A stretch of 64,000 nt of DNA from IMGVR_UViG_3300005253_001115:1-64000, one strand, 5' to 3'; shown: positions 13,586 through 35,202, counted from the stretch's first letter. The notes: generated from the sequence alone by a model not told the origin. Program-made: numbers and translations.

Positions 13586-14125
13586 ATGTCTGTTAAACGA
13601 GCGGTAGGTTATTGTGAGAAAGTGAACTGTGAGGACTACGCCAAGGGCGTATTCCTGCTCAACCACGGGGATACCTTCTACTGCCCCAGGTGCCGAGACA
13701 TAGGTGCTGTGGTAGCAGAGAGAGGCATCCATAGTGCAAAAGACGGTGTATCTTTCAAGGAAGTCAGGGTTGAATTCAACTACGACCCTATCAACAGACG
13801 TTTCAAAGAAATCGGTATCGTCCGAGACGAGTCGATCTGGGGCTCTGGCAGTACATACACGCTGCTCAGTCCTCTCATCAAGACCGAGAAGAGAGCCCTC
13901 AAGGTTGCAGAAGCGATCCTGGCCAATCTCCAGCGCTATGCAGACATTCTGGATGACGGCATTCCCAGAACCACCGAGACCATTGTATCTTTCGATGATG
14001 ATATCAGCGTCTTCACGGACAAGATGAGGCGTCTTGGTGCGGAGTGGGAGAACTCGAATCTCTCAATAAAAAGGCACGTCCGAGCGTGCAAGGATAAAGG
14101 GACTGCATGGCAAGAAATGGCATGA
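13586..14125 (+). CDS. hypothetical zinc-ribbon protein
   Basis: CEKVNC...CPRC; GGAG RBS. Confidence 0.7.
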   Translation: MSVKRAVGYCEKVNCEDYAKGVFLLNHGDTFYCPRCRDIGAVVAERGIHSAKDGVSFKEVRVEFNYDPINRRFKEIGIVRDESIWGSGSTYTLLSPLIKTEKRALKVAEAILANLQRYADILDDGIPRTTETIVSFDDDISVFTDKMRRLGAEWENSNLSIKRHVRACKDKGTAWQEMA

Positions 14126-14328
14126 TCGAAGTAGAGGGCTCCGTGGAGAAGATCCTCGGTGGCGGAATCTACGACGTTTCGGTGGACGGGTCTACTAGAC
14201 ATGTCATGGCCAAGCTGAGCGGTCGCCTACGCCAGTATCGAATCCGGGTCCTCCCCGGAGACAAGGTACGACTCGAAGTCTCGGAAGCCGACACTACAAA
14301 AGGCTTCATCGTTTACAGAATTGGCTAA
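14107..14328 (+). CDS. infA: translation initiation factor IF-1
   Basis: IEVEGSVEKIL...AKLSGRLRQYRIRVLPGDKV...KGFIVYR. Confidence 0.93.
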   Translation: MARNGMIEVEGSVEKILGGGIYDVSVDGSTRHVMAKLSGRLRQYRIRVLPGDKVRLEVSEADTTKGFIVYRIG

Positions 14329-14353
14329 AGTTCTGACCTGTCCCTGCCGATGA
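14326..14353 (+). promoter_or_regulatory. sigma28-like promoter
   Basis: TAAAGTT...GCCGATGA, 16-nt spacer. Confidence 0.6.
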
Positions 14354-14372
14354 GGAGGGGAAGGAGAGCATC

Positions 14373-14543
14373 ATGGTCAAAGTGTACATCATCGAGAGCG
14401 AGCGAGGCTGGGGCCAGAAGATTGACGAGGTGAAAGAGTTCGACACTCTGGAGCTTGCGGAAACCTTCGTGACTGAATTCAACTCTCACAACACCGAAGA
14501 GAAGGTCCCGGACTGGTACATGCGGGCGGAAGTGGTTCGATGA
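14373..14543 (+). CDS. small hypothetical protein (56 aa, not in ORF track)
   Basis: AAGGAG RBS; MVKVYIIESERGWGQKIDE...PDWYMRAEVVR. Confidence 0.7.
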   Translation: MVKVYIIESERGWGQKIDEVKEFDTLELAETFVTEFNSHNTEEKVPDWYMRAEVVR

Positions 14544-15028
14544 TCGAGCTATCCCCCTTCGTGGTTGCTATCCTGGGCATTTTCGCTATCATCGGGTTCA
14601 TCGATGTTGTGGGGCGGTTTTCGTCTCCCCGTCGAACCCGAATACGGGTGGATGGAACTGTAAACAGCAAGAGGCATCTACTGGCATGTGGCCTGATCTC
14701 CCAGGCACACCGCCAGGGAGACCCAGAGTTCTAGTGGCACAGCGTAAGTCGTGCGAAGGAAAAGACGGTAGGACCCTTAGAAAGGGTTCGCGTGTCGAGA
14801 TTCATGCACACACGACGGAGAGCGGCTGGCACATGAGTGGCTTTTTTGGTAAGGTACTGGAAGTATTGCACGATGAGAAGGGTCCATACCTTCGGATCAA
14901 GCTAAAAGGCACTCGTAAAGGTGCGGAGAGGCTTGCCCGAGCGTACAACATAACTAGACGTTAAAGGGGTCCGGGCAGATGAAAATAATCGCTTACAGGG
15001 GCGTACAGAGCAGCACCCTGGGGGAAAC

Positions 15029-15250
15029 ATGGGCTGGGCAAGAGGGTCTGAGCTTGTAGGGCGCGTAGCGCGAGTTTTGGTTGGCGTGGTAGAAACCCCC
15101 GAATGTCGGCGGGAAATCTACGAAGAGCTGGTTCAGGTGGCCCTGGACTTCGATTGTGACACGCTGGATGAGTGCCGAGGGATTGACACTGAACTGGACG
15201 CTGCGATTGACGAGCACTGGGGACCTTACGACAACGAGGAAGAAGACTAA
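15029..15250 (+). CDS. hypothetical protein
   Basis: 73-aa ORF with RBS. Confidence 0.6.
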   Translation: MGWARGSELVGRVARVLVGVVETPECRREIYEELVQVALDFDCDTLDECRGIDTELDAAIDEHWGPYDNEEED

Positions 15251-15444
15251 TGGGGCTTGTGCTTACAATCATTTATGTGGCTATTGGCGTCTCCCTAGCC
15301 AATCATATGGAGTACACGGACGGATTGAAGGGAATCCAGGCTCCTGCTAGATTTTTCGTGCTAGCAGCCGCTTGGCCGTTGCTGGTTTTTTATTGTTTGA
15401 AGTGTCTTGCCGACGGCACTGCCACGCTTCGGAGAAGGGGATGA
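15250..15444 (+). CDS. small membrane protein
   Basis: Two hydrophobic segments. Confidence 0.55.
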   Translation: MGLVLTIIYVAIGVSLANHMEYTDGLKGIQAPARFFVLAAAWPLLVFYCLKCLADGTATLRRRG

Positions 15445-15648
15445 TTTACTCAGGTCGAGTACATAAGATTGGTTTTTGCGCTATTCGTTGCTGGCTGTGG
15501 GTTGCCTTCTTGTGATGCAACACCCTATCACTGGCGCACGGTGGCTAGACTGTGGCTTGTTGCTCGTGGCTGCGGACTTCTTCGGACTACTTAACTTGAA
15601 TGGCTGGGGCGGCAAGCGCCGTAACTGGGCTGGGGAGTTGACACCATA

Positions 15649-16242
15649 ATGGGTTGGGACCAAGAGATATCGCGACAGGATGTACAGGGACTCCTTTTGG
15701 ACCTTCTCGGGGTAGATCCGAACGAGTTGCTCCGGCAGGTGATCGAGCAGAAGCTCGCTGGGCTGGGGCTATCCTACGAGGTCGAGGAAGATCCCGCACG
15801 GGAAGAAGGTGATGGTATGGTCCACAGCTTCCACCCTCGGAAGATCACGTTCTCAGACGGCCGGGTTTTCGTGGAAACCATCACGGAAAGCGTCCGCAGT
15901 GACGATTGGGGCAGCGACCACTACGGATTCGTGGAGGCCGGAAAGCCCTACAAGATCCTGCACGTTGACTATAACGATAACGGCGAGGGGGACGAACCGA
16001 AGGTCACTGAGGAAATAATTCCGGGGTCCGATGGTAATGTAACTTCCCTCGATGAGATTCGTGAGAAGGGGAACGCGCTGACTCCGGGCATGGGGGACGA
16101 GATCAGCGACTTCTTCGATTCCCAGGGAATCACCTCCTTCGAGTTTGCGCCTGCCGAGGAGTGTGGCGGCGGACTCTGTGCAGCCTGCGGCGATGCCGAC
16201 GGACCTTCCAAGGTCTGCGACTGTCCGAACTGTCATGTCTGA
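15649..16242 (+). CDS. hypothetical acidic protein with Cys-rich C-terminus
   Basis: 197 aa. Confidence 0.7.
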   Translation: MGWDQEISRQDVQGLLLDLLGVDPNELLRQVIEQKLAGLGLSYEVEEDPAREEGDGMVHSFHPRKITFSDGRVFVETITESVRSDDWGSDHYGFVEAGKPYKILHVDYNDNGEGDEPKVTEEIIPGSDGNVTSLDEIREKGNALTPGMGDEISDFFDSQGITSFEFAPAEECGGGLCAACGDADGPSKVCDCPNCHV

Positions 16243-16573
16243 GTCCGTAATCGACAGCGGGAAGCTGATCCCAGTTGACCTGACCAGGGAAGAGGCTCTC
16301 GCAGAATGCGAACGTCTCGGGCTGGAATGGATTTTGGAGACTTACGAAGACGCCAAGGAAGCCCTGTGTTGTGAGACTGAAGAGTACGCAGACATTGAGG
16401 GACTGGGGTTCTGCCGGGTCGAAGGCTTCAAGACTGAAGATCCTACTACTGATTGGTGTACCCTATCGAAGAATGAGGACGGGAGCTACGACTTCCGGGC
16501 TAGCTACTACAACGGCGGGGCACATTGGACGGAGCTTGTCGAAGGGGCCTGGAGGAAGCCGAGGAATGGATAA
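16235..16573 (+). CDS. hypothetical protein
   Basis: Overlapping start at 16235. Confidence 0.6.
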   Translation: MSESVIDSGKLIPVDLTREEALAECERLGLEWILETYEDAKEALCCETEEYADIEGLGFCRVEGFKTEDPTTDWCTLSKNEDGSYDFRASYYNGGAHWTELVEGAWRKPRNG

Positions 16574-16736
16574 AGAACATCGGCATCCCAACGTATGGCC
16601 CGCTAAGTTGGGAACCCAGCCAGCACGGCATACAGTGACCGATCTTCTTAACCCTAATTTGCTTACCTACTACCACCTTGCTTCGAGTGACAGTAGATAG
16701 GATAGGCCCCGGTCGGCACCTTTTTGTTAGCCTGTA

Positions 16737-17024
16737 ATGATTGTTGCGTACCACGGCACTAGCCGGGAGAATGTTGATTCCATTTTGAAAGAAGGATTTC
16801 GAGTAGGTACCTATTTTGCCTATGCTATCGAAAATGCTAGAAAATTTGGTGGAGAGTGTGTTTTTGCTGCACAGTTCAACGAAGACGGATTTCGTGGGGA
16901 TAATGACGGATGGCAGTTTCATCTTCGCGATCCTCTAGCGCCAAGCGAAATTCTGTGGTTTGGGTCGTCTACATCCTGCGGTGCTCCGACGGCACGCTGT
17001 ACACCGGGTACACGAACGACATAG
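16737..17024 (+). CDS. small protein with ADP-ribosyltransferase-fold-like YHGT motif
   Basis: [18 protein letters not shown]...GTYFA. Confidence 0.5.
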
Positions 17025-17221
17025 AGGCTAGGCTAAAGAAGCACAATGCCGGAAAAGGCGCGAAGTACACTAGAAGTAGGCTACCAACAGTAGTCTGCTA
17101 CACCTCCCGGTGGGGCAGTAAGTCGCTCGCTATGCGTTGTGAGGCTGACATTAAGAAGAAGACGCGAGCCCAGAAGCTAGCTCTCATTGAAGATCGAGAC
17201 GAATGGGGCTATGGTGACTAA
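16955..17221 (+). CDS. GIY-YIG nuclease, YhbQ/UPF0213-like
   Basis: [18 protein letters not shown]...[15 protein letters not shown]. Confidence 0.85.
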
Positions 17222-17232
17222 AAGGAAACCGA

Positions 17233-18398: not shown

Positions 18399-18607
18399 GA
18401 AACCCCAAAGAGGCTTTGACCAAAGCAGGGTATGAGGCGTACCGGGCACATTTGTGGAACCTGCGGGAAGCTTTGTTCTTCCTTACGGGACACGCTGAGG
18501 ACCTGGAGCTAGATGCTCTTGACGACGGAGAACTGTGCAGAGGGCTGTATACCCTTGAGGGGGCCTTGCACACGCATAGGTTGGTATTGTTGGGCGAGTC
18601 CCGATGA
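18395..18607 (+). CDS. hypothetical protein
   Basis: ATGA overlaps on both sides. Confidence 0.6.
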   Translation: MRNPKEALTKAGYEAYRAHLWNLREALFFLTGHAEDLELDALDDGELCRGLYTLEGALHTHRLVLLGESR

Positions 18608-18996
18608 GGAATGAACCTACCTGTGAATGTATCGTCGATGGCTGCAAAAACCGTATCTCTGCCTTGGACGACCAATTCTGGTGCGGTGAGCACGGTGGAG
18701 AGACAATGTACGAGATGACAGACCGTAAGGGTTTGGTCGCTGCACAGAAAGCCCTGCGTCAGGAGCAGCACGGCACAAAGGAGGTACAGGGCACGCCGAT
18801 CGACGAGAATAAACCCATGACTGTTTCTGAGATGATAAGCGTGGTCGCTTACGAGCAGGGTACGGATGTTCTGGGCGGCACCGAGGAGGTGGAGATTCCC
18901 GACCCAGCTCCTACCAATTTGACCACTATCTTGACCACTACGGCCAGCGTAACGATTACCAAGCCCCGCGAAGCGAACCGTTTGAAGGCGCGGTAA
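18604..18996 (+). CDS. hypothetical protein, N-terminal C3H cluster plus internal tag variant
   Basis: CIVDGC...FWCGEH; TDRKGLVAAQKALR. Confidence 0.65.
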   Translation: MRNEPTCECIVDGCKNRISALDDQFWCGEHGGETMYEMTDRKGLVAAQKALRQEQHGTKEVQGTPIDENKPMTVSEMISVVAYEQGTDVLGGTEEVEIPDPAPTNLTTILTTTASVTITKPREANRLKAR

Positions 18997-19277
18997 TGCT
19001 CTGTACGATATGCTGTAAATGCGGCAGGTGGTACGGCCCCTGGTACGAGGAGCCCAGAAACTGCCTTGGCCAGTGGTATTTTGACGAGGCCGGGAAGCAG
19101 CGCTACAATAGTTGCGATCATTTGCGCTGTGGGGGTTGCGGGAAGGGGGACTTTCCCCTACCCTGTGAAGGTGAGAAAAAGGTGCTGAAAGCTCCTGGGG
19201 GCGCTCCTAGGAAAAAGTTCAATCGAAAGAAGAAAAAAAACAAGAATCGGAACAGAAATCGCTCAAGAAATGGCTAG
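18996..19277 (+). CDS. Cys-rich protein with Lys/Arg/Asn tail
   Basis: CCKCG...CGGC; RKKKKNKNRNRNRSR. Confidence 0.6.
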   Translation: MLCTICCKCGRWYGPWYEEPRNCLGQWYFDEAGKQRYNSCDHLRCGGCGKGDFPLPCEGEKKVLKAPGGAPRKKFNRKKKKNKNRNRNRSRNG

Positions 19278-19346
19278 GCTGTCCGATACTACACTAAAGA
19301 GCTTGTGCATCGCGAAAACTTTTCGGGTGCTTATATATTGGATACA

Positions 19347-19424
19347 ATGATGGTCTCAGTAAAACAGTCCCAATCGAAGCCGAGTCAGCCCAGTAATCCT
19401 GGGCAGGAGACTGGTGTGCTGTAG
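19347..19424 (+). CDS. putative attenuator leader peptide (25 aa)
   Basis: Leaderless ATG after TATATT; followed by a terminator. Confidence 0.45.
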   Translation: MMVSVKQSQSKPSQPSNPGQETGVL

Positions 19425-19450
19425 CTCGAACTGAAACGAGCGACTTTTCG

Positions 19451-19484
19451 CGCCCCGGCCTCCAACGACCGGGGCGTTTTTTTT
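19451..19484 (+). terminator. intrinsic terminator upstream of second tRNA array
   Basis: cgccccgg...ccggggcg plus T8. Confidence 0.8.
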
Positions 19485-19496
19485 GGAGGTACCGTT

Positions 19497-19910
19497 TTGG
19501 CTGGAAGAAATAAATCACCCAATTGTAAAAATGGTCACCCGTTTACAAAAGAGAACACGCAAGTACGGCCTAACGGCGCTCGCAGATGCCGTACCTGCCA
19601 TAGAGCGGAAAACCGAAAATACGATAGAGCAAATGTACTGAAGAGGCGTGAAGGGCAACTCAAGATCAAGTACGATATTTCTGCTTACGACTACGAAGAA
19701 ATGCTGCGCAGGCAAGGTAATGTTTGCGCTATATGCAAAGAAGGTTCTGATAAAGTTTTTCATGTAGATCACGATCATTGTACTGGGGAAGTTCGTGGAT
19801 TGCTGTGCAAGCCATGTAACGTTGGTTTGGGTTGGTTCAGGGATAACCGGAAAGCGCTTTTGGAAGCTTCAGAATACTTGCTTCAAGACTCCAGAAGTGG
19901 CCAAAAATAA
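19497..19910 (+). CDS. endonuclease VII-family (HNH) homing endonuclease
   Basis: CAIC...VDHDH.TGEVRGLLC..CNVGLG. Confidence 0.88.
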   Translation: MAGRNKSPNCKNGHPFTKENTQVRPNGARRCRTCHRAENRKYDRANVLKRREGQLKIKYDISAYDYEEMLRRQGNVCAICKEGSDKVFHVDHDHCTGEVRGLLCKPCNVGLGWFRDNRKALLEASEYLLQDSRSGQK

Positions 19911-19980
19911 GAAGGCAAAAGGATTTTATTGCGACCGTTCCTGTATGGCGCGGGATTTCGGACGCGGAAGAAGTAAATGT

Positions 19981-20055
19981 TCCCCGTAATGCACAAGGCG
20001 TGCAGTCGTCCTGTTAAGGCGTATGAGCTAGGTTCGATTCCTAGACGGGGAGCCA
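19981..20055 (+). tRNA. tRNA-Asn(GTT)
   Basis: CT-GTT-AA loop, G73, CCA. Confidence 0.9.
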
Positions 20056-20067
20056 ATTTAAGGCAAA

Positions 20068-20159
20068 CAAAGGTCATATCCCGGTCGCCAGAGAGGCGGT
20101 ACGGGTATCGCGACAGGCGATAAGGTAGGCTAGCGTTTGTATAGCCGGGAAGTTCTTTG
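20068..20159 (+). ncRNA. uncharacterised multibranch RNA carrying GACAG hairpin copy 6 (20106-20122)
   Basis: Outer caaagg/tctttg and tcccgg/ccggga helices; inner cgcc-AGAGA-ggcg and tatcgc-GACAG-gcgata. Confidence 0.55.
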
Positions 20160-20164
20160 CTCCC

Positions 20165-20239
20165 GGCCCTTATAACTCAATTGGCAGAGTGCCGGGCCTG
20201 AAGCCCGGATGTTGCAGGTTCGAGTCCTGCTAAGGGCCA
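20165..20239 (+). tRNA. atypical tRNA: 8-bp acceptor (His-like G-1:C73), loop CC-TGA-AG
   Basis: Perfect stems, no U33, no CCA. Confidence 0.6.
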
Positions 20240-20247
20240 CAGAGAGT

Positions 20248-20262
20248 GCCGCGACAGGCGGC
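20248..20262 (+). repeat. GACAG hairpin copy 7
   Basis: gccgc-GACAG-gcggc. Confidence 0.85.
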
Positions 20263-20283
20263 GAGCGACCGGCAACAGTTTAA

Positions 20284-20360
20284 CAGGGTGTAGTTCAGTC
20301 TGGAAGAATCCTCCCCTCGGAAGGGAGAGGTCGTTGGTTCAAATCCAACCACCCTGACCA
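20284..20360 (+). tRNA. tRNA-Pro(CGG)
   Basis: ctccc-CT-CGG-AA-gggag, CCA. Confidence 0.92.
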
Positions 20361-20380
20361 TTTGATTACGAAAGGATAAA

Positions 20381-20652
20381 CAGACGGGCGGACAATCGCT
20401 CCAAGGAGAGGAAAGTCGGGACTGCACGGTACAGCCTAGAGGGTAACACCCTTCCACCGTGAGGTGCGTGACGGCAACAGAGACGAGCCTATTTGGTTAG
20501 GTTGAAACGGGCGACAGCGTGGGCGCAGCAACCGAAAGCAGGGGACATTGATCGTACCAGAGAGTCCCCGGGTATCGGGCAAAGATTCTAGTGGTAACAC
20601 TAGAGCAAGACGAATGATTGTCGATAACAGAATCCCGCTTATAGCCCATCTG
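20381..20652 (+). ncRNA. rnpB: RNase P RNA (compact, bacterial type)
   Basis: GAGGAAAGTCGGGAC and AACAGAATCCCGCTTA (P4), GCAACAGAGA, TGAAACGG, terminal P1 cagacgggc/gcccatctg. Confidence 0.93.
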
Positions 20653-20670
20653 CAATTTTAGGAGAAGAAC

Positions 20671-21108
20671 ATGTTGGCATTGGAAGATTTGGCAGGAGCT
20701 GACGAAACATTGGTTCGTGACCATATCGTGTGCGAGTTCGAGATCGAGGAGAAGGAGCTTGACGGATTCGAGGTCTTGATTGCTTACGAGAGTTGCGGTA
20801 GTTGGGGTTGCGATTCGAGCAACTGGTTCTTGCTCCGCAAGGACGGGCAGTTGTACGAGAACCACGGCTCGCACTGCTCGTGCAACGGGTTCGAGGAGCA
20901 GTGGGCTCCTGAGGAGACGAGCGTTGATTACTTGTTGTCGGAGAAGTTCTACTTTCCGTCGGGTGGGTACGACACCAACGGAAACGAAGAGGCCGTGAGT
21001 CGAGAGATTCGCCGTTTTTTTACAGTGACAGAAGCGACTGGCCGAAGGGCTGCAATCGCTGCACAGAAGGCACGGGCCGCAAACCCGTACATTGAAACGG
21101 AGGAATAG
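20671..21108 (+). CDS. hypothetical protein with C-terminal RRxAIxxQKAR tag
   Basis: GSHCSC motif; ends TGRRAAIAAQKARAANPYIETEE. Confidence 0.75.
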   Translation: MLALEDLAGADETLVRDHIVCEFEIEEKELDGFEVLIAYESCGSWGCDSSNWFLLRKDGQLYENHGSHCSCNGFEEQWAPEETSVDYLLSEKFYFPSGGYDTNGNEEAVSREIRRFFTVTEATGRRAAIAAQKARAANPYIETEE

Positions 21109-21114
21109 AAATAT

Positions 21115-21191
21115 TGGGAACTAGCTCAACTGGCTAGAGCGTCGGTCTCTGACACCGAAGGTTCTGGGTTCGAACCCCAGGTTCCCAACCA
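21115..21191 (+). tRNA. tRNA-Gln(CTG)
   Basis: tcggt-CT-CTG-AC-accga, CCA. Confidence 0.92.
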
Positions 21192-21199
21192 TACATTAT

Positions 21200-21275
21200 G
21201 GACCCCTAGCTCAACAGGTAGAGCGGCTGTCTCTTAAACAGCAGGTTCAGGGTTCGAGTCCCTGGGGGTTCACCA
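21200..21275 (+). tRNA. tRNA-Lys(CTT)
   Basis: gctgt-CT-CTT-AA-acagc, CCA. Confidence 0.93.
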
Positions 21276-21280
21276 TATAT

Positions 21281-21326
21281 CCGGGTGTAGCGCAGTCTGG
21301 TAGCGCGCCTGCTTTGGGAGCAGGAT
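21281..21326 (+). pseudogene. 5' half of tRNA-Pro(TGG), T arm and acceptor 3' strand lost
   Basis: D arm and cctgc-TT-TGG-GA-gcagg intact, then sequence switches. Confidence 0.8.
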
Positions 21327-21419
21327 TTGGGTGGCACTACTTGCCCAGAAAACTTACAGCCTTTGTGCCTTAATTGCCATAGAGACAAAACGGTACAGGA
21401 GTCGAAAAATAGAAAATGA
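21327..21419 (+). pseudogene. C-terminal remnant of an HNH endonuclease
   Basis: LGGTTCPENLQPLCLNCHRDKTVQESKNRK-stop, no start. Confidence 0.75.
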
Positions 21420-21421
21420 TT

Positions 21422-21496
21422 CGGGGTATGGCGCAGAGGCAGCGCGCCGCGTTTGGGACGCGGAGGTCGAGATTTCGAAATTCTCTACCCCGACCA
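21422..21496 (+). tRNA. tRNA-Pro(TGG)
   Basis: ccgcg-TT-TGG-GA-cgcgg, CCA. Confidence 0.88.
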
Positions 21497-21503
21497 TACA
21501 TAA

Positions 21504-21591
21504 GGACCGGTAGCAAAATTGGCTGAATGCAGCGGACTTTTAACCCGCAGGAGAAATCCCACTGTGAGTTCGAATCTCACCCGGTTCACCA
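21504..21591 (+). tRNA. tRNA-Lys(TTT) with long variable arm
   Basis: CT-TTT-AA loop; gga-GAAA-tcc extra arm; CCA. Confidence 0.8.
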
Positions 21592-21597
21592 TATTAA

Positions 21598-21685
21598 GGA
21601 AGAGTGGCAGATAGGAATCGCGCCCGGTTGCTAACCGGAGGCCGGGGGCAACCCCGAGTGGGATCGTTACCCACCTCTTCCGCCA
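21598..21685 (+). tRNA. tRNA-Ser(GCT)
   Basis: TT-GCT-AA, long variable arm, G73, CCA. Confidence 0.88.
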
Positions 21686-21692
21686 TACATAT

Positions 21693-21767
21693 TGGGGTGT
21701 CATCCAACGGCTAGGATACCGCTCTTTGAAAGCGAGGATAAAGGTTCGACTCCTTTCACCCCATCCA
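21693..21767 (+). tRNA. tRNA-Gln(TTG)
   Basis: cgct-CT-TTG-AA-agcg, CCA. Confidence 0.88.
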
Positions 21768-21770
21768 TTT

Positions 21771-21856
21771 AGAAGGTACCGTGCAGGGCACAAACTGGGC
21801 TTGAACCCCAGGGCATCGCGAGAGCGGTGGGAGATCGTTACTTCTACCTTCTGCCA
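21771..21856 (+). tRNA. tRNA-Ser(TGA)
   Basis: ctggg-CT-TGA-AC-cccag, long variable arm, G73, CCA. Confidence 0.8.
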
Positions 21857-21973
21857 TACAGCCAGGAAGAGTGACAGAGCGGCTATTGTGCCTGTTTCGA
21901 AAACAGTGGCCTGGGCGAGAGCCCAGCGGGGGTTCGAGTCCTCCCTCTTCCGGTACTTCTACCTTCTGCCATA
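21839..21973 (+). repeat. 20-bp direct repeat of the tRNA-Ser(TGA) 3' end (21839-21858 / 21954-21973)
   Basis: tacttctaccttctgccata occurs twice. Confidence 0.9.
21865..21952 (+). tRNA. tRNA-Ser(CGA), no encoded CCA
   Basis: TT-CGA-AA, long variable arm, G73. Confidence 0.88.
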
Positions 21974-23929: not shown

Positions 23930-24017
23930 GGAGAGTTGCCAGAGAGGCCAAATGGGCTTGCTTGGAAAGCAATGCGCGGTAAAACGCACGGGGGTTCGAC
24001 TCCCCCACTCTCCGCCA
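23930..24017 (+). tRNA. tRNA-Ser(GGA)
   Basis: TT-GGA-AA, long variable arm, CCA. Confidence 0.92.
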
Positions 24018-24590: not shown

Positions 24591-25136
24591 ACTCGTCCTT
24601 GAGGAGAACACACAGTGAGCAAGGTTCTTCAAAAGATCGGAACTATACGCACGACTGCCGAGCGTTTCGGCGTACCCACCGAAGGCATCCCAACGGAGCG
24701 GCATAATACCCTTGTATTCGTCAACCACAGGTTGCGCTCGACCCTAGGTAGCGCAAACTGGGTCGGAAAGTTTTGCTGGATCGAGATACACAAGTTAGTT
24801 TTCGCGAACCCCGAGCAAATGCGCGAGACGCTGGCACACGAGATTGCGCATGCCATGCAGGGTCCCGGCCACGGTCACAGCCAGCGATGGGAAGCAACCG
24901 CAAAGTCTCTCGGAAGTAAGGGCAAAAGACACGCTTCGCGCGAAGCTTGCGAAGCTATTGGAATCAGGGATACCTACCGCGTGGTAGCGCATTGCGAGAG
25001 ATGCGGCAGTGAATTCAAACGGGCCCGTGCCCCCGATAAACGCAAACAGTACACGCATATTAGGTGCGGCGGTGATATTGTCCTCGACTCGGAATACATC
25101 GAGGACAATAGAAAGGCAGCCAATGCTGGTTAGACT
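24568..25136 (+). repeat. 26-bp direct repeat (24568-24593 / 25111-25136) flanking the SprT-like gene
   Basis: gaaaggcagccaatgctggttagact occurs twice. Confidence 0.92.
24615..25133 (+). CDS. SprT-like zinc metalloprotease
   Basis: TLAHEIAH (HExxH), GHGHSQRW, C-terminal CERC..HIRC ribbon. Confidence 0.85.
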   Translation: MSKVLQKIGTIRTTAERFGVPTEGIPTERHNTLVFVNHRLRSTLGSANWVGKFCWIEIHKLVFANPEQMRETLAHEIAHAMQGPGHGHSQRWEATAKSLGSKGKRHASREACEAIGIRDTYRVVAHCERCGSEFKRARAPDKRKQYTHIRCGGDIVLDSEYIEDNRKAANAG

Positions 25137-25905
25137 GGTTTCAGATTTGCACCTTGAGTTCGGAAAGGACTGGGAGCCTGTGGTTCCTGAACTACCCGAG
25201 GACAGCGAGTCTGTTCTTGTGGTAGCCGGGGACATCGACACGGGTCTGGACGCTTGCGACTTTCTCCAGCAGGTTGCCCATCGGTTCTTGCACACGATTT
25301 ACGTTCTTGGCAACCACGATTTCTACAGAGGCAATGATCTCCACCTTCTGCCCGGATATGTTCGAGAGGAGTTGAGCGACTTCCCCAATATCACCCTTCT
25401 GGAGAACGAGACTCTGGTTGTGGGCAATGTCCGGTTCTTGGGGACTACCCTCTGGACCAATATGGCGAACGAGAATCCGACTGTCATGCTCATTATCGAG
25501 CAGGGCATGGCGGACTACGGGCAAATCAAGAAGAACGGCGGGGAGAGGATATTCGCCCCTGACACGATTGCTATACACAAGTTGGCAGTGAAATTTCTCG
25601 AAGAGGAGTTGCCGAAGGAGCACGATGGTCCGACCATAGTCGTCACACATCACCTTCCTAGCTTCCAAAGCGTACACCCCATGTACCATCGACCGGGGGT
25701 GAATGCTATCAATCCCGGGTTCTACTCCAGCTTGGATGGGTTGCTGGTTGACCACGACATTGCTTACTGGCTTCACGGCCACACGCACGCGACCGTAGAA
25801 TACGAGATCGAAGGCACTAGAGTACGAATGAACCCGCTTGGGTACGCGCCGGTAGAGCGTAAAGAGAATCCGCAATTTTCACCAACATGGAGAATCGAAG
25901 TATGA
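25123..25905 (+). CDS. calcineurin-like metallophosphoesterase
   Basis: SDLH, AGD, GNHD, THH and HGHTH motifs. Confidence 0.9.
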   Translation: MLVRLVSDLHLEFGKDWEPVVPELPEDSESVLVVAGDIDTGLDACDFLQQVAHRFLHTIYVLGNHDFYRGNDLHLLPGYVREELSDFPNITLLENETLVVGNVRFLGTTLWTNMANENPTVMLIIEQGMADYGQIKKNGGERIFAPDTIAIHKLAVKFLEEELPKEHDGPTIVVTHHLPSFQSVHPMYHRPGVNAINPGFYSSLDGLLVDHDIAYWLHGHTHATVEYEIEGTRVRMNPLGYAPVERKENPQFSPTWRIEV

Positions 25906-26879: not shown

Positions 26880-26886
26880 ATAAGGT

Positions 26887-27695: not shown

Positions 27696-28042
27696 GCAAA
27701 CCCAGTAGCAAACCTCTGGTTCGATGCACAGGGAAAGAGTGCTCCATTCACTGCCCACACAGCCTACCACATGAAAAGTGGGGCGAACTGAAGACATGTA
27801 CTCTCTGGGGAGAATGTTCAGAGAGTGAGAAAAAGATTCGTTGCGTGAAAGTGAAAGAAGGAGAACACGATGAATGACCGAAACTGTGCGGTCCGAGAGA
27901 GAATCGGAGACGGCGTTTCAGTTGGGCGCTGCTGGATTTACACAGACGAGGCTGAGGGTACTCTGACGTGCCCCAGACACGGAGATGTAACAAGTATTCA
28001 GAAGCGCTTCAGCGAGACTGGGGAGCTTGGAGAAGACCCGAG

Positions 28043-29272
28043 ATGAGTGACTACGACGTATTTCAGGGTGGCGTGCCGATCAAGGCATGGACGAAGGGCG
28101 TGCCGATTGAGTCGGCGGCTCTCGATCAGTTGAAGAATGTGGCGGCTCTGCCGTTCATTCACAAGTGGGTAGCAGTGATGCCGGACGTTCACTTCGGGCG
28201 TGGTGCTACCGTTGGCTCGGTCATTCCGACCAAGGGGGCTATCATTCCGGCGGCTGTCGGTGTGGACATTGGTTGCGGCATGGTCGCCGTGCGAACGGGA
28301 CTCGTGTCTCACGACCTTCCGACCAACTTGAAGAAGTGGCGTCTAGCTATCGAAGAGGCTGTGCCGCACGGCGCAGTCAAGGGTGCTTCCCACGATCGTG
28401 GCGGATTCTCTCCGGGCGCTCTTCCGAAGACGAACTCTCGTCTGTGGCAGAACAAGTTGGCGAATCGTTACGCTACCATTATGGGAAAGCACAAGTCGGT
28501 TGCTCACAAGGCTGGTCCACACCAGCTTGGTACGCTTGGGGGCGGTAACCACTTCATCGAGATTTGCCTGGATGAGGCGGATCGCGTGTGGCTGATGCTG
28601 CACTCGGGTAGCCGTGGCCTTGGCAACAAGATCGGAATGTACTTCACCGATCTGGCAAAGAAGGAGATGAAGATTCACTTCGTGAACTTGCCGGACAAGG
28701 ATCTTGCATATCTGCCGGAGGGTACGCAGCACTTCGATGACTACATCGAGGCGATGACGTGGGCGCAGGACTTTGCTCAGTTCAACCGCGACCTTATGGT
28801 TCTTCAGGTGTTCGATGCCTTGAAGCGCGAGGGCGGAGTTCCGCAGAAGAAGCTCTTGACTCACGATGTGGCAGTCAATTGCCATCACAATTACAGCGCT
28901 CGCGAGAACCACTACGGACAGAACGTGTGGCTCACTCGTAAGGGAGCAGTGTGCGCGCGCAAGGGCGTCATGGGAATCATCCCGGGTTCGATGGGTACCA
29001 AGTCCTTCATTGTAGAGGGCAAGGGTAACCCGGAGAGCTTTGACTCGTGCTCGCACGGGGCTGGTCGCATCATGAGCCGCTCGAAGGCAAAGAAGACGTT
29101 CACGCTGGACGACCACATCAAGGCAACGGAGGGGGTCGAGTGTCGCAAGGACGAAGGAGTCATTGATGAGACGCCGGGAGCTTATAAGGATATCGACGCT
29201 GTTATGGCAGCGCAGGCATCTTTGGTGGACATCAAGCATACGCTTCGTCAGGTGCTCTGTGTCAAGGGCTAA
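28043..29272 (+). CDS. rtcB: RtcB RNA 3'-phosphate/5'-OH ligase
   Basis: MPDVH, VGVDIGCG, GTLGGGNHF, HSGSRG, HHNY, SHGAGR and DETPGAYK motifs. Confidence 0.97.
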   Translation: MSDYDVFQGGVPIKAWTKGVPIESAALDQLKNVAALPFIHKWVAVMPDVHFGRGATVGSVIPTKGAIIPAAVGVDIGCGMVAVRTGLVSHDLPTNLKKWRLAIEEAVPHGAVKGASHDRGGFSPGALPKTNSRLWQNKLANRYATIMGKHKSVAHKAGPHQLGTLGGGNHFIEICLDEADRVWLMLHSGSRGLGNKIGMYFTDLAKKEMKIHFVNLPDKDLAYLPEGTQHFDDYIEAMTWAQDFAQFNRDLMVLQVFDALKREGGVPQKKLLTHDVAVNCHHNYSARENHYGQNVWLTRKGAVCARKGVMGIIPGSMGTKSFIVEGKGNPESFDSCSHGAGRIMSRSKAKKTFTLDDHIKATEGVECRKDEGVIDETPGAYKDIDAVMAAQASLVDIKHTLRQVLCVKG

Positions 29273-30938: not shown

Positions 30939-30947
30939 AGAGATTCA

Positions 30948-31361: not shown

Positions 31362-31465
31362 TATGATGATAAATTGCAAACGCTGCGGAATCCTTACCAA
31401 AGATTTTCTGTACCACTGGCTCTGGTGTCGTAATTGTCGCTTGAAGCACCAAAATGGTAGATAAA

Positions 31466-32071: not shown

Positions 32072-32091
32072 ACTGGAGAGATAATGGTGAG

Positions 32092-35000
32092 TTAGGGTCG
32101 AGGCTCCTGCTCGTACTCGATCGGCATACCAGCGGACTGGATGAGCTGCTGAACGCGGGCGAACAGGTCGTCGGCACCGTCGTGCTCGGAGGACTTGTCC
32201 AGAGCCTCCAGACGGGGCGTGATACCAAGTAGCCACTCGGGAGGACCGTCAATCACGATTCCGCCGTGACGCTCGAACCTGTGGCTCCTGAGGGCCATAA
32301 TTGCCGGACTTACTTCCTCGAAAAGGGGGCTCATGATTACGATACGCTCCCCCACGGGACCCTTAGGATCGACCGCAATAGCCATTTTCTGGTTTGGCAT
32401 TAGCGGTTGAACCTGCTTCTGTTCGACATTTGCGTCATCGTCAGCTTGGATGGGGTCGATCGGAACTTCTCGCTCGTTTCTGTGATTCACGGATGGTCCT
32501 ATTCCCGGGCGTTCCTCTTCCAGAGGAGTGCTGTATTCCTTCGGGAAGATGGCGTCGATGTCCATCAGGTCTTCCATAGTTCGCGCCGCTTCCGTGGCTG
32601 CGGGGTAAATGTTCTCTTCGGGCTCCTCGATACTCATGAAGCCAGACTTCTTGCCTGTAAAGTCCATGTCCCAGTACGGACGGATCTTGGTGCCGCCACC
32701 ACGACCGCCTCGTCCCCGCTCTCCGTGATTCATGTCATCACCGCCCGGATTTTGTCCGCCGGGTCCATGCATGTTCGTGGGGTCGAGAGTTGAAGTAGCT
32801 TTGTCTGCATCGTCGTGGTCGTCGTAGAAATCAGGGTGCTCCACAAGATGATCCTTAGTCACCTCCTTAGCTATGCCTCTATCTACACCGTGTTCCCACA
32901 CTTCAATATCTGTGCCTGTCTTTAGCGCCTCGGGGTCGAAGGCAGAATCCGGCATGCCATCAGCCCTACCGCCAGGAAGCAGCTCTTCTTGAGCGCAAGC
33001 CTTGAACATGTTGCGCTCTGGGTCCGGGTAGTTCTGTACGGGCAGGAATCCTGTCTCTTGGTCTGCACCACGAGGCTTAATCATCGGGGCACGGTCGAGA
33101 CCGCCGCCACCTGGCTTACGAACTATCTGTCCGGGGAAGCTGGAGGGAGGGGACTCTTCGGCACTTCTAGTGGGGGACGGGTGCGGAGTGGAAGTCTCGG
33201 GCATCTGTGGCAACGGAAGCTCTACAGGCAAGAAGCCCCGGTCCTTGTTGTTGGGTGTCTCGTATGCTTCAGCAGGGTCGCCTTCCCAGTCCGGGAAGAC
33301 ACCGGTTTCTGGTGTCATGCCGTTCGGGCTGGGCTCAAGCTCCTCCATTTGGTGCGGCGTAGACCCGCCGAACCCGTCACGGCCAAGAGGCCCTTCTAGG
33401 GGATGGTTCGAGAATCTAGATCCTCGATCGAAGTCCTTGACGCCGGGATACTCTTCGGCGCGCTTGTGTAGGCGCTGGGGCTCCGCCGTGGCTAGGCCCG
33501 GATGCTGGGATTCACCCTTCTTGTCAGCGGGCCACTCGTAAAGATTCCACAAGAGGAAATCATCTTGCGTCTTGTCTGGGTCTGTTCGGAATGAGCTAGG
33601 GCCTACACCTGTGCCGAATACTCCGCTCTTGGTGTTACCCTTCTTGCGCTCTTCTCTATAGTTCCCGTCGAAGCATTCTTCACCTTCGCGGATATGCGAG
33701 TCCCCACATTCATTCATGTTCTTCTCCTGAGAACCGCCCTCCTCCGAGCGGTCCTTCAAAAAACGAGTAGCCAATTCGATCAGCTTGTCCGGGTCTGTTA
33801 TTGCTGTCTCGTCCTCAATCGAACGAGTCAGAGCCAGGAACTTGCCCATATCGGGTCCGGGCTTGAAGCCCTTCGCGATTAGGTGCTTACCCGAAACAGA
33901 GTCTACCAGCTTCCCGCCTGGGGCAGCTACAGAAGTGACATGCTGGTGGTAGTCCTCAAGGAACTTGTCCTGGGAACTTACGTCCCTGCGCAGGGCTTCC
34001 TCGGTTGTTCTGCCCAACACATCAGCCTTCGACAAGGCCGCAAGCAGCTCGGGGCTAACATCGGCATCACCCAATGTGCGACCCAGCTTCCTGTAGCCTT
34101 TGCGGCCACTGGTTCCGGGAAGGATCGCCGGGCGCAAGTGGGTATCAACTAGAGTCTCAACCTGCTTAATTAGAGCCAGTGGTGCTTTCATCCTGCCCAA
34201 GAACGCGCGAGTAGGCTCGATGCCAGCCTCTTCGTGTCCACGGGAGGTAATGTACCCGTCGATCTCCTCAGTAGAGACCGGCTTTCCAAAGTCGTGTGCC
34301 AGAGCCCCAAGCATTAGGGGGAGATCGAACGCAGGATCGCCAGTGCGCTGTTTTGCAGCCTCATCGAGAACCAGCAGGGTGTGGACGTAAACGTCCCCCT
34401 CGGGGTGCCACTTAGGTTCCTGCGGAACACCCAGTAGCGCCTCGATCTCCGGGAAGTAGCGGAGCAGGTTTGCCTGATGCAGCACCTCAATTCCCTTACT
34501 CGGTTTTTGGCCCTTTAGGAGCATCTTGGAGAACTCCGGCAGGATACGCTCACCCGGGAGCTGCTCAAGCGGCTGTGCGGCCACGAGTTGAAGTGTCTGG
34601 GGGTCTACATCAAAGTCAAAACGCGCAGCGAACTGGGCCACTCTGAGGGCTCGTAACGGGTCGTCAGAGAACGTGTTGACATCTGCGGCACGCAGGATTC
34701 CTGCCTTGAGGTCAGCGACACCGTTTAAGGGGTCAATGATCTCGTCTGTTAAAGGGTCTTTCGAAAGGGCGTTGATCGTGAGATCGCGCCTGCGGGCAGC
34801 GTCTTCCACGCTCATGGTAGGATCAGGAATTACATCAAAGCCTTTGTGCCCCTCTCCGGTCTTCTTCTCGCGGCGAGGGAGTGCAACGTCCCAGTCAAGC
34901 TCTTGGATGTTCAGCACGCCGAACTGCTGTCCGACCTCTTTTACATTACCAAACCGGGAAAGGATCTCGTTGACCTTCTCCATGGGGAGACCGAAGACCT

Positions 35001-35202
35001 CGAAGTCCACGTCTTTGCTTGGGAGGCCGAGTAGCTCATCTCGCACGATGCCCCCGACGAGCAAGGCTACCCCTCCCGCGCCTTCAACAGCGCGTGCGAA
35101 TGCCTCGACCAGAGCTTTTTCATTCGGATTCACGAGAATATTCCTGTATTTCTTCCTCATCCGCATAGCGGCTATGTGTGCGAATCCTGTGGCAATTTGC
35201 AC
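32092..35202 (-). CDS. cca: CCA tRNA nucleotidyltransferase (class II + HD domain) fused to ~550-aa acidic/Pro-rich extension
   Basis: VGGIVRD, DVDFE, RRDLTINA, DDPLRALR, HPEGDV, HDFGK. Confidence 0.9.
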   Translation of the reverse strand: MQIATGFAHIAAMRMRKKYRNILVNPNEKALVEAFARAVEGAGGVALLVGGIVRDELLGLPSKDVDFEVFGLPMEKVNEILSRFGNVKEVGQQFGVLNIQELDWDVALPRREKKTGEGHKGFDVIPDPTMSVEDAARRRDLTINALSKDPLTDEIIDPLNGVADLKAGILRAADVNTFSDDPLRALRVAQFAARFDFDVDPQTLQLVAAQPLEQLPGERILPEFSKMLLKGQKPSKGIEVLHQANLLRYFPEIEALLGVPQEPKWHPEGDVYVHTLLVLDEAAKQRTGDPAFDLPLMLGALAHDFGKPVSTEEIDGYITSRGHEEAGIEPTRAFLGRMKAPLALIKQVETLVDTHLRPAILPGTSGRKGYRKLGRTLGDADVSPELLAALSKADVLGRTTEEALRRDVSSQDKFLEDYHQHVTSVAAPGGKLVDSVSGKHLIAKGFKPGPDMGKFLALTRSIEDETAITDPDKLIELATRFLKDRSEEGGSQEKNMNECGDSHIREGEECFDGNYREERKKGNTKSGVFGTGVGPSSFRTDPDKTQDDFLLWNLYEWPADKKGESQHPGLATAEPQRLHKRAEEYPGVKDFDRGSRFSNHPLEGPLGRDGFGGSTPHQMEELEPSPNGMTPETGVFPDWEGDPAEAYETPNNKDRGFLPVELPLPQMPETSTPHPSPTRSAEESPPSSFPGQIVRKPGGGGLDRAPMIKPRGADQETGFLPVQNYPDPERNMFKACAQEELLPGGRADGMPDSAFDPEALKTGTDIEVWEHGVDRGIAKEVTKDHLVEHPDFYDDHDDADKATSTLDPTNMHGPGGQNPGGDDMNHGERGRGGRGGGTKIRPYWDMDFTGKKSGFMSIEEPEENIYPAATEAARTMEDLMDIDAIFPKEYSTPLEEERPGIGPSVNHRNEREVPIDPIQADDDANVEQKQVQPLMPNQKMAIAVDPKGPVGERIVIMSPLFEEVSPAIMALRSHRFERHGGIVIDGPPEWLLGITPRLEALDKSSEHDGADDLFARVQQLIQSAGMPIEYEQEPRP

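What the first reader, a model, noticed from the sequence alone, without database searches (positions are those of the whole stretch)
14107..35202. Self-contained tRNA maturation and repair kit, including phage RNase P RNA
Seen: rnpB (5' processing), CCA enzyme (3' end), RtcB (religation), a metallophosphoesterase, IF-1, Y-like RNAs and more than 30 tRNAs. The rnpB is only about 272 nt with a short P12 and appears to lack P13/P14. RNase P RNA is uncommon in phages. Inference: defence against tRNA-targeting immunity.
Basis: partly seen in the sequence, partly recalled or inferred. Interest (0 to 1): 0.6.

Follow-up and report, generated by a model that had tools for sequence, protein, structure and literature searches.

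The report
Phage-borne RNase P ribozyme in tRNA array
A 267-kb uncultured marine-sediment phage carries its own structurally conserved copy of the RNase P ribozyme inside its cluster of 33 tRNA genes; dozens of other large phages do the same, which I found described in no paper, while the other "kit" genes nearby are ordinary huge-phage accessories.

Summary
The core observation holds. The window is the first 64 kb of a 266.6-kb phage contig with terminase, portal and major head genes. At 20380-20657 (+) lies a 278-nt bacterial type-A RNase P RNA (Rfam 149 bits, threshold 100). It has a complete catalytic domain, a 3-bp P3, a 4-bp P12 and no P13/P14. IF-1, RtcB, a CCA-type nucleotidyltransferase, a metallophosphoesterase and 33 tRNAs are also real. 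"Y-like RNAs" are not supported: no Rfam match and no Ro60 gene.

The ribozyme is under selection. Across 25 relatives, 96% of pair cells are paired, 40 of 78 pairs change on both sides, and the P6 pseudoknot covaries. It groups with single-copy chromosomal rnpB genes of Burkholderiales/Usitatibacter genomes; the two I inspected also lack P13/P14, so the reduced form is inherited rather than a phage invention.

At least 32 IMG/VR records carry rnpB-like genes, from unrelated large phages. Almost all sit in same-strand tRNA arrays. None of the 27 tested encodes RnpA; 8 have RtcB and 6 a CCA-type enzyme.

The likeliest role is 5' processing of the phage's own tRNA array with host RnpA. It is neither a self-contained kit nor specifically an immunity countermeasure. 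I found no paper describing phage-encoded RNase P RNA.

The parts
20380..20657 (+). RNase P RNA (rnpB), bacterial type A, reduced. P1 2-10/265-273; P2 12-18/237-243; P3 stub; P4 34-41/255-261 with bulged U37; P5; P6 pseudoknot 49-53/175-179; P7-P11; P12 stub 109-112/119-122; no P13/P14; P15/P16 with an L15 GGU; P18 with a GUAA loop (numbering from 20380).
   Evidence: RF00010 149.4 bits. Helices mapped by hand. On 25 relatives, 96.2% of pair cells are paired and 40 of 78 pairs change on both sides.
73..13095 (+). First part of the tRNA region: 21 tRNA genes among small ORFs.
   Evidence: ARAGORN and Rfam. 30 of the 33 tRNAs have an encoded CCA, and spacers within the arrays are 3-8 nt.
19981..20360 (+). 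tRNA-Asn(GUU), an atypical short-arm tRNA with a UGA anticodon, and tRNA-Pro(CGG). The last ends 19 nt before rnpB.
21115..21952 (+). Dense tRNA array downstream of rnpB: Gln, Lys, Pro, Lys(UUU, long variable arm), Ser, Gln, Ser, Ser, plus a truncated tRNA-like piece at 21281-21349.
23930..24017 (+). tRNA-Ser(GGA), the last tRNA of the region.
20671..21108 (+). 145-aa ORF of unknown function directly after rnpB, with a ribosome-binding site. It sits beside rnpB only in the closest relatives, so it is not a general partner.
   Evidence: No Pfam match; phrog_8792 and phrog_21421; synteny.
14107..14328 (+). Translation initiation factor IF-1 homologue (73 aa).
   Evidence: PF01176 60 bits. TIGR00008 64 bits, over its cut-off. 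Homologues lie near rnpB in L202 and L222. No match in G013.
19497..19910 (+). Endonuclease VII/HNH-type free-standing endonuclease, present in only part of the population.
   Evidence: PF02945 86 bits. A joint 19464->19957 that skips it appears in run X4.
25126..25905 (+). Calcineurin-like metallophosphoesterase, about 259 aa. The longest ORF starts at 25009.
   Evidence: PF00149; phrog_1649; homologues are about 255-260 aa. The model has pLDDT 95 and is closest to PptH (TM 0.72), then Rv0805.
27968..29272 (+). RtcB RNA ligase.
   Evidence: PF01139 426 bits over the full profile. 80% identical in G013.
32092..35202 (-). Class II tRNA nucleotidyltransferase (CCA-type head, RNA-binding and HD domains, residues about 40-460) fused to a C-terminal extension of about 570 aa, rich in Pro, Gly, Glu and Asp, of unknown function.
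   Evidence: PF01743, PF12627 and HD; phrog_2244 264 bits; CCA-adding enzymes in the PDB; best NCBIfam match is 'multifunctional CCA addition/repair protein' at 216 bits, below its cut-off; motifs read.

Best explanation
The 278-nt element is a working, host-derived gene for the RNA subunit of RNase P. It belongs to the phage's tRNA gene region, not to a defence module.

Proposed mechanism:
- It is transcribed on the same strand as the flanking tRNAs (shown).
- It is freed from the long transcript by the same cuts that free the tRNAs (inferred).
- It assembles with the host's RnpA protein, because the phage has none (absence shown, assembly inferred).
- It cuts the 5' leaders of the phage pre-tRNAs (inferred).
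- Many neighbouring tRNAs are only 3-8 nt apart and 30 of 33 carry an encoded CCA. One RNase P cut per junction is therefore the main endonucleolytic step needed to take the array apart, and the retained GGU in L15 fits CCA-bearing substrates (inferred).
- The phage thus raises or maintains RNase P RNA supply during infection (inferred).

The reduced shape (no P13/P14, short P12) came with the gene from a betaproteobacterial-type donor. The phage lineage shortened P3 further.

RtcB, the CCA/HD enzyme, IF-1 and the tRNAs are separate translation-support and RNA-repair accessories of the kind already known from huge phages.
For: Family and catalytic core:
- RF00010 scores 149.4 bits against 100.
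- All five conserved regions are present by sequence, as are the bulged U of P4, the L15 GGU and the GNRA loops of L9 and L18.

Selection on structure:
- In 25 relatives of 65-100% identity, 96.2% of pair cells are paired, against 37-46% when the partners are slid.
- 40 of 78 pairs change on both sides.
- P6 is 100% paired, with 4 of 5 pairs covarying. P4 and P5 are invariant.

Link to tRNA arrays:
- 24 of 26 IMG/VR rnpB loci hold 1-17 same-strand tRNAs within 3.3 kb.
- No opposite-strand tRNA occurs in any of 44 loci.
- A tRNA lies within 30 nt upstream in 17 loci and within 30 nt downstream in 19.
- Cellular rnpB loci have 0-2 tRNAs in 8 kb.

Origin and dependence on the host:
- RnpA is absent from all 27 rnpB-bearing viral records.
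- The phage clade is monophyletic (support 1.0). It groups (0.99) with single-copy chromosomal rnpB genes of Burkholderiales/Usitatibacter genomes; the two I inspected also lack P13/P14.

Conservation in phages:
- The gene is kept in the collinear relative G013, whose TerL is 91% identical. rnpB there is 88% identical with compensatory changes, while neighbouring proteins are 60-87% identical.
- The region is contiguous in an independent study's contigs.
- tRNA ends and spacers are.
Against: - There is no expression or activity data. No RNA run holds this phage.
- Whether RNase P RNA rather than RnpA limits RNase P activity in the unknown host is not known. If RnpA is limiting, an extra RNA would compete with the host RNA rather than add capacity.
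- In this phage the downstream neighbour is an ORF, not a tRNA, so 3'-end formation is unexplained.
- P1 has one C-A mismatch.
- The donor inference rests on a pattern-limited sample of cellular genomes, capped at 120 rows.
- T4 and other tRNA-rich phages manage with host RNase P, so the benefit is not obvious.
Confidence: 0.7

Rival explanations
1. Counter-defence kit. rnpB, the CCA enzyme, RtcB, the phosphoesterase and the tRNAs act together to replace and repair tRNAs cut by host anticodon nucleases.
For: - RtcB and a CCA/HD-type repair enzyme are present and conserved in G013.
- The tRNA set is large.
- An unusual long-arm tRNA-Lys(UUU) is present, and long-arm Lys and Asn tRNAs recur in related arrays. 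Lys(UUU) is the known target of PrrC-type nucleases (own knowledge).
- Published reviews assign RtcB and CCA enzymes of jumbo phages to repair of cleaved tRNAs (PMC7824862; PMC7162821).
Against: - rnpB co-occurs with RtcB in only 8 of 27 records and with a CCA-type enzyme in 6 of 27, but with tRNA arrays in nearly all.
- The genes are scattered over 15 kb among unrelated genes, and the CCA gene is on the other strand, next to an endolysin.
- The phosphoesterase resembles PptH and Rv0805, not an RNA end-healing enzyme.
- RNase P does not repair anticodon-loop cuts.
Confidence: 0.2
2. A non-catalytic RNA. The phage RNA acts as a sponge that captures host RnpA, or another host factor, to shut down host tRNA maturation. 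Alternatively it acts as a decoy for a host nuclease.
For: - No phage RnpA exists, so the RNA must interact with host protein if it acts at all.
- The specificity-domain elements are reduced.
Against: - Catalytic-core nucleotides and the P4 and P5 helices are invariant in all 25 relatives.
- The substrate-binding GGU and the J11/12-J12/13 modules are kept. That is more constraint than protein binding alone would need.
- The cellular sister genes are equally reduced, and each is the only rnpB of its genome.
Confidence: 0.07
3. An artefact or decaying passenger: a cellular rnpB fragment misassembled into the contig, or a recently captured pseudogene.
For: - IMG/VR and GenBank phage sets do contain cellular contamination with rnpB.
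- The contig is 'linear' and 89% complete.
Against: - Contigs of the probable source runs X1 and X2 span 18604-21315, and overlapping contigs of an independent study (run X4) tile 19134-21289 with at most one difference each, across phage ORFs, tRNAs and rnpB.
- The same arrangement occurs in G013 and in several metagenome contigs.
- Covariation is strong.
- Hallmark phage genes lie on the same contig.
Confidence: 0.03

Closest known systems
Chromosomal type-A RNase P RNA (rnpB) of Burkholderiales/Usitatibacter genomes (loci L354 and L356; Rfam RF00010)
   Same: - The same family.
- The same P4 variant (GUCGGG / CCCGCUUA).
- The same J11/12 and J12/13 sequences.
- No P13/P14, and in L356 also a short P12.
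- These genes group with the phage clade in the tree.
   Different: - The cellular genes are 307-323 nt, with a full 9-10-bp P3 and an extra hairpin before the 3' strand of P4.
- Each is the only rnpB of its genome and has no tRNA within 8 kb.
- The phage gene is 278 nt with a 3-bp P3, sits in a tRNA array and is about 63-65% identical to them.
Phage T4 tRNA cluster processed by host RNase P, and the T4 Pnkp/Rnl1 repair of PrrC-cut tRNA-Lys
   Same: - A phage tRNA cluster with very short spacers whose maturation needs RNase P (PMC11143913).
- The phage encodes RNA repair enzymes.
   Different: - T4 relies wholly on host RNase P and encodes no rnpB.
- T4 repairs with Pnkp plus an ATP-dependent ligase. 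This phage has RtcB and no Rnl2-family ligase.
- Most tRNAs here carry an encoded CCA.
Translation-related gene sets of huge phages (Al-Shayeb et al. 2020, PMC7162821; Iyer et al. 2021, PMC7824862)
   Same: tRNA arrays, IF-1, a CCA-adding enzyme and RtcB-type ligation of cleaved tRNAs are all described there.
   Different: Neither paper mentions RNase P: 0 occurrences in each.
Naturally reduced RNase P RNAs: CPR bacteria lacking P13/P14/P16/P17 (PMC8172020), and Mycoplasma fermentans and the Thermoproteaceae, which lack P12
   Same: Specificity-domain helices are lost while the catalytic core is kept. Loss of P13/P14 is called 'not unusual' in bacteria.
   Different: Those are the sole cellular enzymes of their organisms. 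This one is an extra copy on a virus without a cognate protein gene.
Salmonella rsr-yrlBA-rtcBA type module (Ro60, Y-like RNAs, RtcB)
   Same: RtcB is present.
   Different: No Y RNA or YrlA match and no Ro60/TROVE gene. The module is not present.

Membership tests
Bacterial RNase P RNA, class A (RF00010) | Covariance-model score at or above the curated gathering score | tested here: met
   149.4 bits against 100, full model 1-367, E 4e-46.
Bacterial RNase P RNA, class A (RF00010) | P4 long-range helix with a bulged U, flanked by conserved regions I and V | tested here: met
   GAGGAAAGUCGGG ... ACAGAAUCCCGCUUA. All 7 pairs are invariant in 25 of 25 relatives.
Bacterial RNase P RNA, class A (RF00010) | P6 pseudoknot and the P15/L15 GGU that binds the tRNA 3'-CCA | tested here: met
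   P6 (49-53/175-179) is 100% paired, with 4 of 5 pairs changed on both sides. GGGU at 191-194 is invariant.
Bacterial RNase P RNA, class A (RF00010) | Specificity domain with P7-P12, conserved J11/12 and J12/13, and the stacked P13/P14 helices typical of class A | tested here: not met
   P7-P11 and both joining regions are present. P12 is a 4-bp stub and P13/P14 are absent (0 of 43 model positions). The same absence occurs in the two cellular sister genes inspected and is reported as not unusual in bacteria, so this does not exclude membership.
Bacterial RNase P RNA, class A (RF00010) | Pre-tRNA 5'-leader cleavage activity | not testable with these tools
   No RNA data; needs an in vitro assay.
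Bacterial RNase P holoenzyme | A cognate protein subunit RnpA (PF00825) encoded in the same genome | tested here: not met
   No match in G000 at E<=1. 0 of 27 rnpB-bearing viral records. The control genomes gave matches.
RtcB RNA ligase (PF01139) | Full-length match to the family profile | tested here: met
   426 bits, profile positions 1-426. Activity was not tested.
Class II CCA-adding enzyme | Head-domain motifs (GGxVRD...DxD; RRD; EDxxR) and CCA rather than A-only or poly(A) specificity | tested here: inconclusive
   GGIVRD...DVD and RRRD are present. Motif D reads DDPLR rather than EDxxR. The best NCBIfam match is the CCA addition/repair protein at 216 bits, below its 451-bit cut-off; PcnB scores 103 bits. 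Specificity cannot be read from sequence.
Bacterial Y RNA (YrlA) / Ro60 module | A Y RNA-like gene and a TROVE-domain Ro60 protein | tested here: not met
   No Rfam Y RNA match at E<=1 in 1-36000. No PF05731 match in the genome.
RNA end-healing phosphoesterase (Pnkp / lambda-phosphatase type) | Closest structural kinship to the Pnkp phosphatase or lambda-phosphatase branch of the metallophosphoesterases | tested here: not met
   The model (pLDDT 95.4) is closest to PptH 6unc (TM 0.72), then Rv0805 and purple acid phosphatases. No Pnkp or lambda phosphatase appears among the top 50.
Translation initiation factor IF-1 (TIGR00008 / PF01176) | Score over the curated equivalog cut-off | tested here: met
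   64.0 bits against 61.15; PF01176 60.2 bits against 30.2.

The most novel reading that the evidence does not exclude
Large phages of many unrelated lineages carry their own RNase P ribozyme genes, cut out of tRNA arrays by the tRNA-processing machinery and always without the protein subunit. If so, phages are an unrecognised reservoir of RNase P RNA diversity, reaching down to about 200-nt forms with almost no specificity domain (G002, a complete 184-kb genome). During infection they would re-equip the host's RnpA with a phage-made catalytic RNA.
Probability: 0.45. Interest if true: 0.8.

Novelty: new variant of a known kind. Interest (0 to 1): 0.65.

Why it matters
RNase P is treated as a universal cellular enzyme, and phage tRNA maturation has been the textbook case of dependence on host RNase P since T4.

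A conserved, covarying RNase P RNA gene inside phage tRNA arrays, repeated in dozens of large phages and never accompanied by rnpA, would have three consequences:
- Phages would be supplying the catalytic RNA of a host ribonucleoprotein.
- It would offer natural minimised ribozymes (278, 265 and 200 nt) for structure-function work.
- It would give a host-linked marker: the rnpB tree points to a betaproteobacterial donor.

It also corrects the idea of a single self-contained anti-immunity kit. The association is with tRNA biogenesis.

Tried and rejected
- **Y RNAs.** An E-value-mode Rfam scan of 1-36000 and a TROVE search found nothing.
- **ORF 20671-21108 as a phage-specific protein cofactor.** It is adjacent to rnpB only in the nearest relatives and absent beside rnpB elsewhere. 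Rejected.
- **Deposited phage genomes.** blastn with six different rnpB queries found no convincing phage match. The named records that matched (a Salmonella contig, 'Microcystis phage MaAM05' with fabI/engB/mtgA, Acinetobacter MD-2021a contigs) look cellular or were not checked; two 'Bacteriophage sp.' faecal contigs were not followed up. blastn is insensitive here, so this is only weak evidence of absence.
- **Expression.** No RNA run holds the phage.
- **Promoter and terminator scan.** Nothing usable.
- **Circularity.** The contig ends do not overlap, and no tRNA forms across the junction.
- **IF-1 homologue search for host clues.** Only unnamed metagenomic proteins came back.
- **Own covariance model of the 278-nt RNA.** Not attempted, because calibration of a model that long would exceed the tool's time limit. 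nhmmer plus MAFFT and a hand-mapped structure were used instead.
- **The 3' P4 pattern ACAGAANCCCGCTTA.** It mostly hit chance sites: 5 of 49 records had an rnpB.


Full report
**What the window is.** The window is bases 1-64000 of a single-contig IMG/VR virus record of 266,640 bp. It is classed as 'linear', CheckV puts it at 89% complete, and its GC content is 53%. It encodes a large terminase, a portal protein, a head-tail connector and a major head protein. The head protein is 37% identical to that of Pseudomonas phage PaBG and 35% to Burkholderia phages BcepSauron and BcepSaruman. The DNA occurs in marine-sediment metagenomes of at least two studies. Contigs of the probable source runs span 18604-21315. 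Contigs of the independent study tile 19134-21289 at high depth with at most one difference each. rnpB is thus physically linked to phage ORFs and tRNAs.

**Checking the parts list.**
- ARAGORN finds 33 tRNAs, all on the + strand, all between 73 and 24017, and none elsewhere in the genome.
- The contig begins inside the 3' half of another tRNA, so the array runs past the contig end.
- Rfam places a bacterial class A RNase P RNA at 20380-20657, scoring 149.4 bits against a gathering score of 100.
- IF-1 lies at 14107-14328, RtcB at 27968-29272 and a calcineurin-like phosphoesterase at 25126-25905. A class II tRNA nucleotidyltransferase with an HD domain lies at 32092-35202 on the minus strand. 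All are confirmed.
- 'Y-like RNAs' are not confirmed. There is no Y RNA or YrlA match even at E<=1 and no Ro60/TROVE gene.
- The interval is not a compact module. It also holds an endonuclease VII/HNH gene, an SprT-like protein, DUF2227, a heptose-type adenylyltransferase homologue, a GH108 endolysin, another HNH endonuclease and many small ORFs.
- The CCA gene belongs to a minus-strand block together with the endolysin.

**Anatomy of the ribozyme.** I mapped the helices by hand onto the Rfam alignment.
- The catalytic domain is complete. It has P1, P2 and P4 with the bulged U, flanked by GAGGAAAG and ACAGAAUCCCGCUUA.
- It has P5 and a 5-bp P6 pseudoknot. P15/P16 carry the GGU that pairs with the tRNA 3'-CCA. 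P18 has a GUAA loop. J18/2 and J2/4 are present.
- The specificity domain keeps P7-P11, a GUGA loop on P9, and the conserved J11/12 and J12/13 strands.
- P12 is a 4-bp stub. J12/13 runs straight into the 3' strand of P11, so P13 and P14 are absent.
- P3 is reduced to 3 bp with a tetraloop.

**Is it functional?**
- Pattern scans of IMG/VR and of metagenome contigs, followed by an nhmmer search, gave 24 further sequences of the same reduced architecture. They are 65-100% identical to the window's.
- On this alignment, 96.2% of pair cells in the hand-mapped structure form standard pairs. When the partners are slid by 1-3 columns, only 37-46% do.
- 40 of 78 pairs have changes on both sides. No shuffle in 500 reaches the observed covariation score.
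- P6 is paired in every sequence, with 4 of 5 pairs covarying. P4 and P5 never vary.
- The collinear relative G013 has a TerL 91% identical and other proteins 60-87% identical. It keeps rnpB at 88% identity, with compensatory changes in P1, P6, P12, P16 and P18.
- This is the signature of an RNA whose fold, tertiary pseudoknot included, is under selection. It is not a decaying fragment.

**Where it came from.**
- The P4 variant GUCGGG/CCCGC also occurs in cellular genomes.
- The best cellular matches to the phage clade are contigs of Burkholderiales, Usitatibacter and other betaproteobacterial metagenome-assembled genomes.
- In the five such genomes I tested, the match is the only rnpB present. 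It is 307-323 nt long and scores 218-245 bits.
- The two I inspected also lack P13/P14, and one also has the short P12.
- In a FastTree of 70 sequences the phage clade is monophyletic (support 1.0) and joins this betaproteobacterial group (0.99).
- The missing P13/P14 is therefore inherited from the donor type. Published work already calls such loss 'not unusual' in bacteria (PMC8172020).
- Phage-specific changes are the P3 stub and the loss of a hairpin before the 3' strand of P4.
- Caveat: the cellular sample was chosen by a 16-base pattern and capped at 120 rows.

**How general it is.**
- Scanning whole IMG/VR records with RF00010 gave rnpB-like genes in 25 of 49 records that hold the 5' P4 pattern and in 5 of 49 that hold the 3' pattern. 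Adding G001 and the window makes at least 32 records.
- They include complete genomes with terminal repeats of 168, 170, 181, 184 and 385 kb, and near-complete ones of 279-456 kb.
- A scan for the canonical P4 sequence gave 44 more loci. About 12 of these lie in dense tRNA arrays of contigs of up to 463 kb; the rest look like cellular contamination.
- Only G013 shares the window's terminase, so the carriers are unrelated phages.
- 24 of 26 loci hold 1-17 tRNAs within about 3.3 kb.
- In 44 loci every tRNA is on the rnpB strand. A tRNA lies within 30 nt upstream in 17 of them and within 30 nt downstream in 19, in several cases with no spacer at all.
- Cellular rnpB loci have 0-2 tRNAs in 8 kb.
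- None of the 27 rnpB-bearing viral records tested encodes RnpA. Eight have RtcB and six have a CCA-type enzyme.

**Mechanism.**
- Shown: a conserved class A RNase P RNA with an intact catalytic core; same-strand embedding in tRNA arrays; absence of rnpA; an encoded CCA on 30 of 33 tRNAs; and 3-8-nt spacers within the arrays.
- Inferred: the RNA is co-transcribed with the tRNAs and released by tRNA-end processing.
- Inferred: it binds host RnpA, which is plausible given its host-like origin.
- Inferred: it makes the one endonucleolytic cut per junction that such tightly packed, CCA-bearing arrays need. Exonucleases would then trim the short trailers.
- In close relatives the downstream tRNA starts 5-9 nt after rnpB. 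In the window's subgroup an ORF has been inserted there instead.
- Why a phage needs its own copy is unknown. The options are a higher processing load, a long infection after host shut-off, or displacement of the host RNA from RnpA.

**The other genes.**
- RtcB and a CCA/HD enzyme are plausible RNA repair functions. Because CCA is encoded in the tRNA genes, the nucleotidyltransferase would repair 3' ends rather than build them.
- Both classes, and IF-1, are already described in huge phages.
- The phosphoesterase belongs to a very large family of about 255-aa 'predicted phosphodiesterases'. Its confident model is closest to M. tuberculosis PptH and then Rv0805. Nothing ties it to RNA.
- The CCA enzyme carries a C-terminal extension of about 570 aa, rich in Pro, Gly, Glu and Asp, of unknown role.

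**Literature.**
- Nine full-text searches and targeted reading found no description of a phage-encoded RNase P RNA.
- The jumbo-phage comparative review, the huge-phage paper and a 2024 RNase P review do not mention one.
- Subscription journals are not covered, so this is absence of evidence within the library only.

**Verdict.**
- The 'self-contained kit against tRNA-targeting immunity' reading is only partly supported.
- The more interesting result is that rnpB inside tRNA arrays is a recurrent, apparently undescribed feature of large phages.

Noticed in passing
window 13308-13344 (+): An abiF RNA motif (RF03085, 59 bits against a gathering score of 37). It is a single copy ending in a T-run. 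It is 96% conserved at the syntenic site of the relative G013, far above its flanks. No AbiF-like protein lies beside it. It could be a phage copy of a host abortive-infection RNA element.
   Followed up: partly
window 21504-21591 (+); also L190, L196, L085, L029, L230: tRNA-Lys(UUU) is 88 nt long with a long variable arm (a class II-like body, discriminator A). Long-arm tRNAs with Lys, Asn, His, Cys, Met and Ile anticodons recur in rnpB-bearing phage arrays: 8 long against 56 short Lys, and 11 long against 23 short Asn. This could be a way to escape anticodon nucleases while keeping anticodon-based charging.
   Followed up: partly
window 20165-20240 (+) and 21281-21349 (+): A well-scoring tRNA (62 bits) has a UGA anticodon but a short variable arm and no encoded CCA. 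Separately, a truncated tRNA-Pro-like piece (29 bits) lies just upstream of the intact tRNA-Pro(UGG). ARAGORN also calls an odd tRNA with a 2-base anticodon at 12392-12464.
   Followed up: no
window 1093, 6216, 13129, 13263, 20109, 20250, 24063 (+); genome 252683 and 253885 (-): A repeated short hairpin, NNCGCGACAGGCGNN (a GACAG loop closed by a CGC/GCG stem), sits in intergenic spots of the tRNA region. It is possibly a processing or regulatory signal.
   Followed up: partly
window 19464-19957: The endonuclease VII/HNH ORF (19497-19910) just upstream of the rnpB tRNA block is missing from part of the population in an independent metagenome: a joint skips 492 bases. This is typical of a mobile homing endonuclease.
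   Followed up: partly
L186:1501-1700 (-) in G002; L002:1501-1765 (+) in G001: A complete 183.6-kb phage genome with terminal repeats has a 200-nt RNase P RNA-like gene (61 bits) in a 14-tRNA array. It has P1-P5 and the conserved core but almost no specificity domain and no P18. A 389-kb record has a 265-nt form with 25 nt where the model has 105. In size these approach the smallest natural RNase P RNAs I know of.
   Followed up: partly
window 32092-33819 (-): The CCA-type enzyme has a C-terminal extension of about 570 aa, rich in Pro, Gly, Glu and Asp, with no family match. In G013 the open frame at the homologous gene is 1505 aa.
   Followed up: no
window 1-45: The contig starts in the 3' half of a tRNA (T arm, acceptor stem, CCA). 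The tRNA array therefore continues beyond the assembled end, and the tRNA count is a lower bound. Asp, Cys, His, Trp and Tyr tRNAs are not seen in the assembled part.
   Followed up: partly
L188 (GenBank MW495066.1, 'Microcystis phage MaAM05', 112438-118472): The only named isolate 'phage' with an rnpB-like blastn hit carries fabI, engB and mtgA around it. This part of the record looks cellular.
   Followed up: partly
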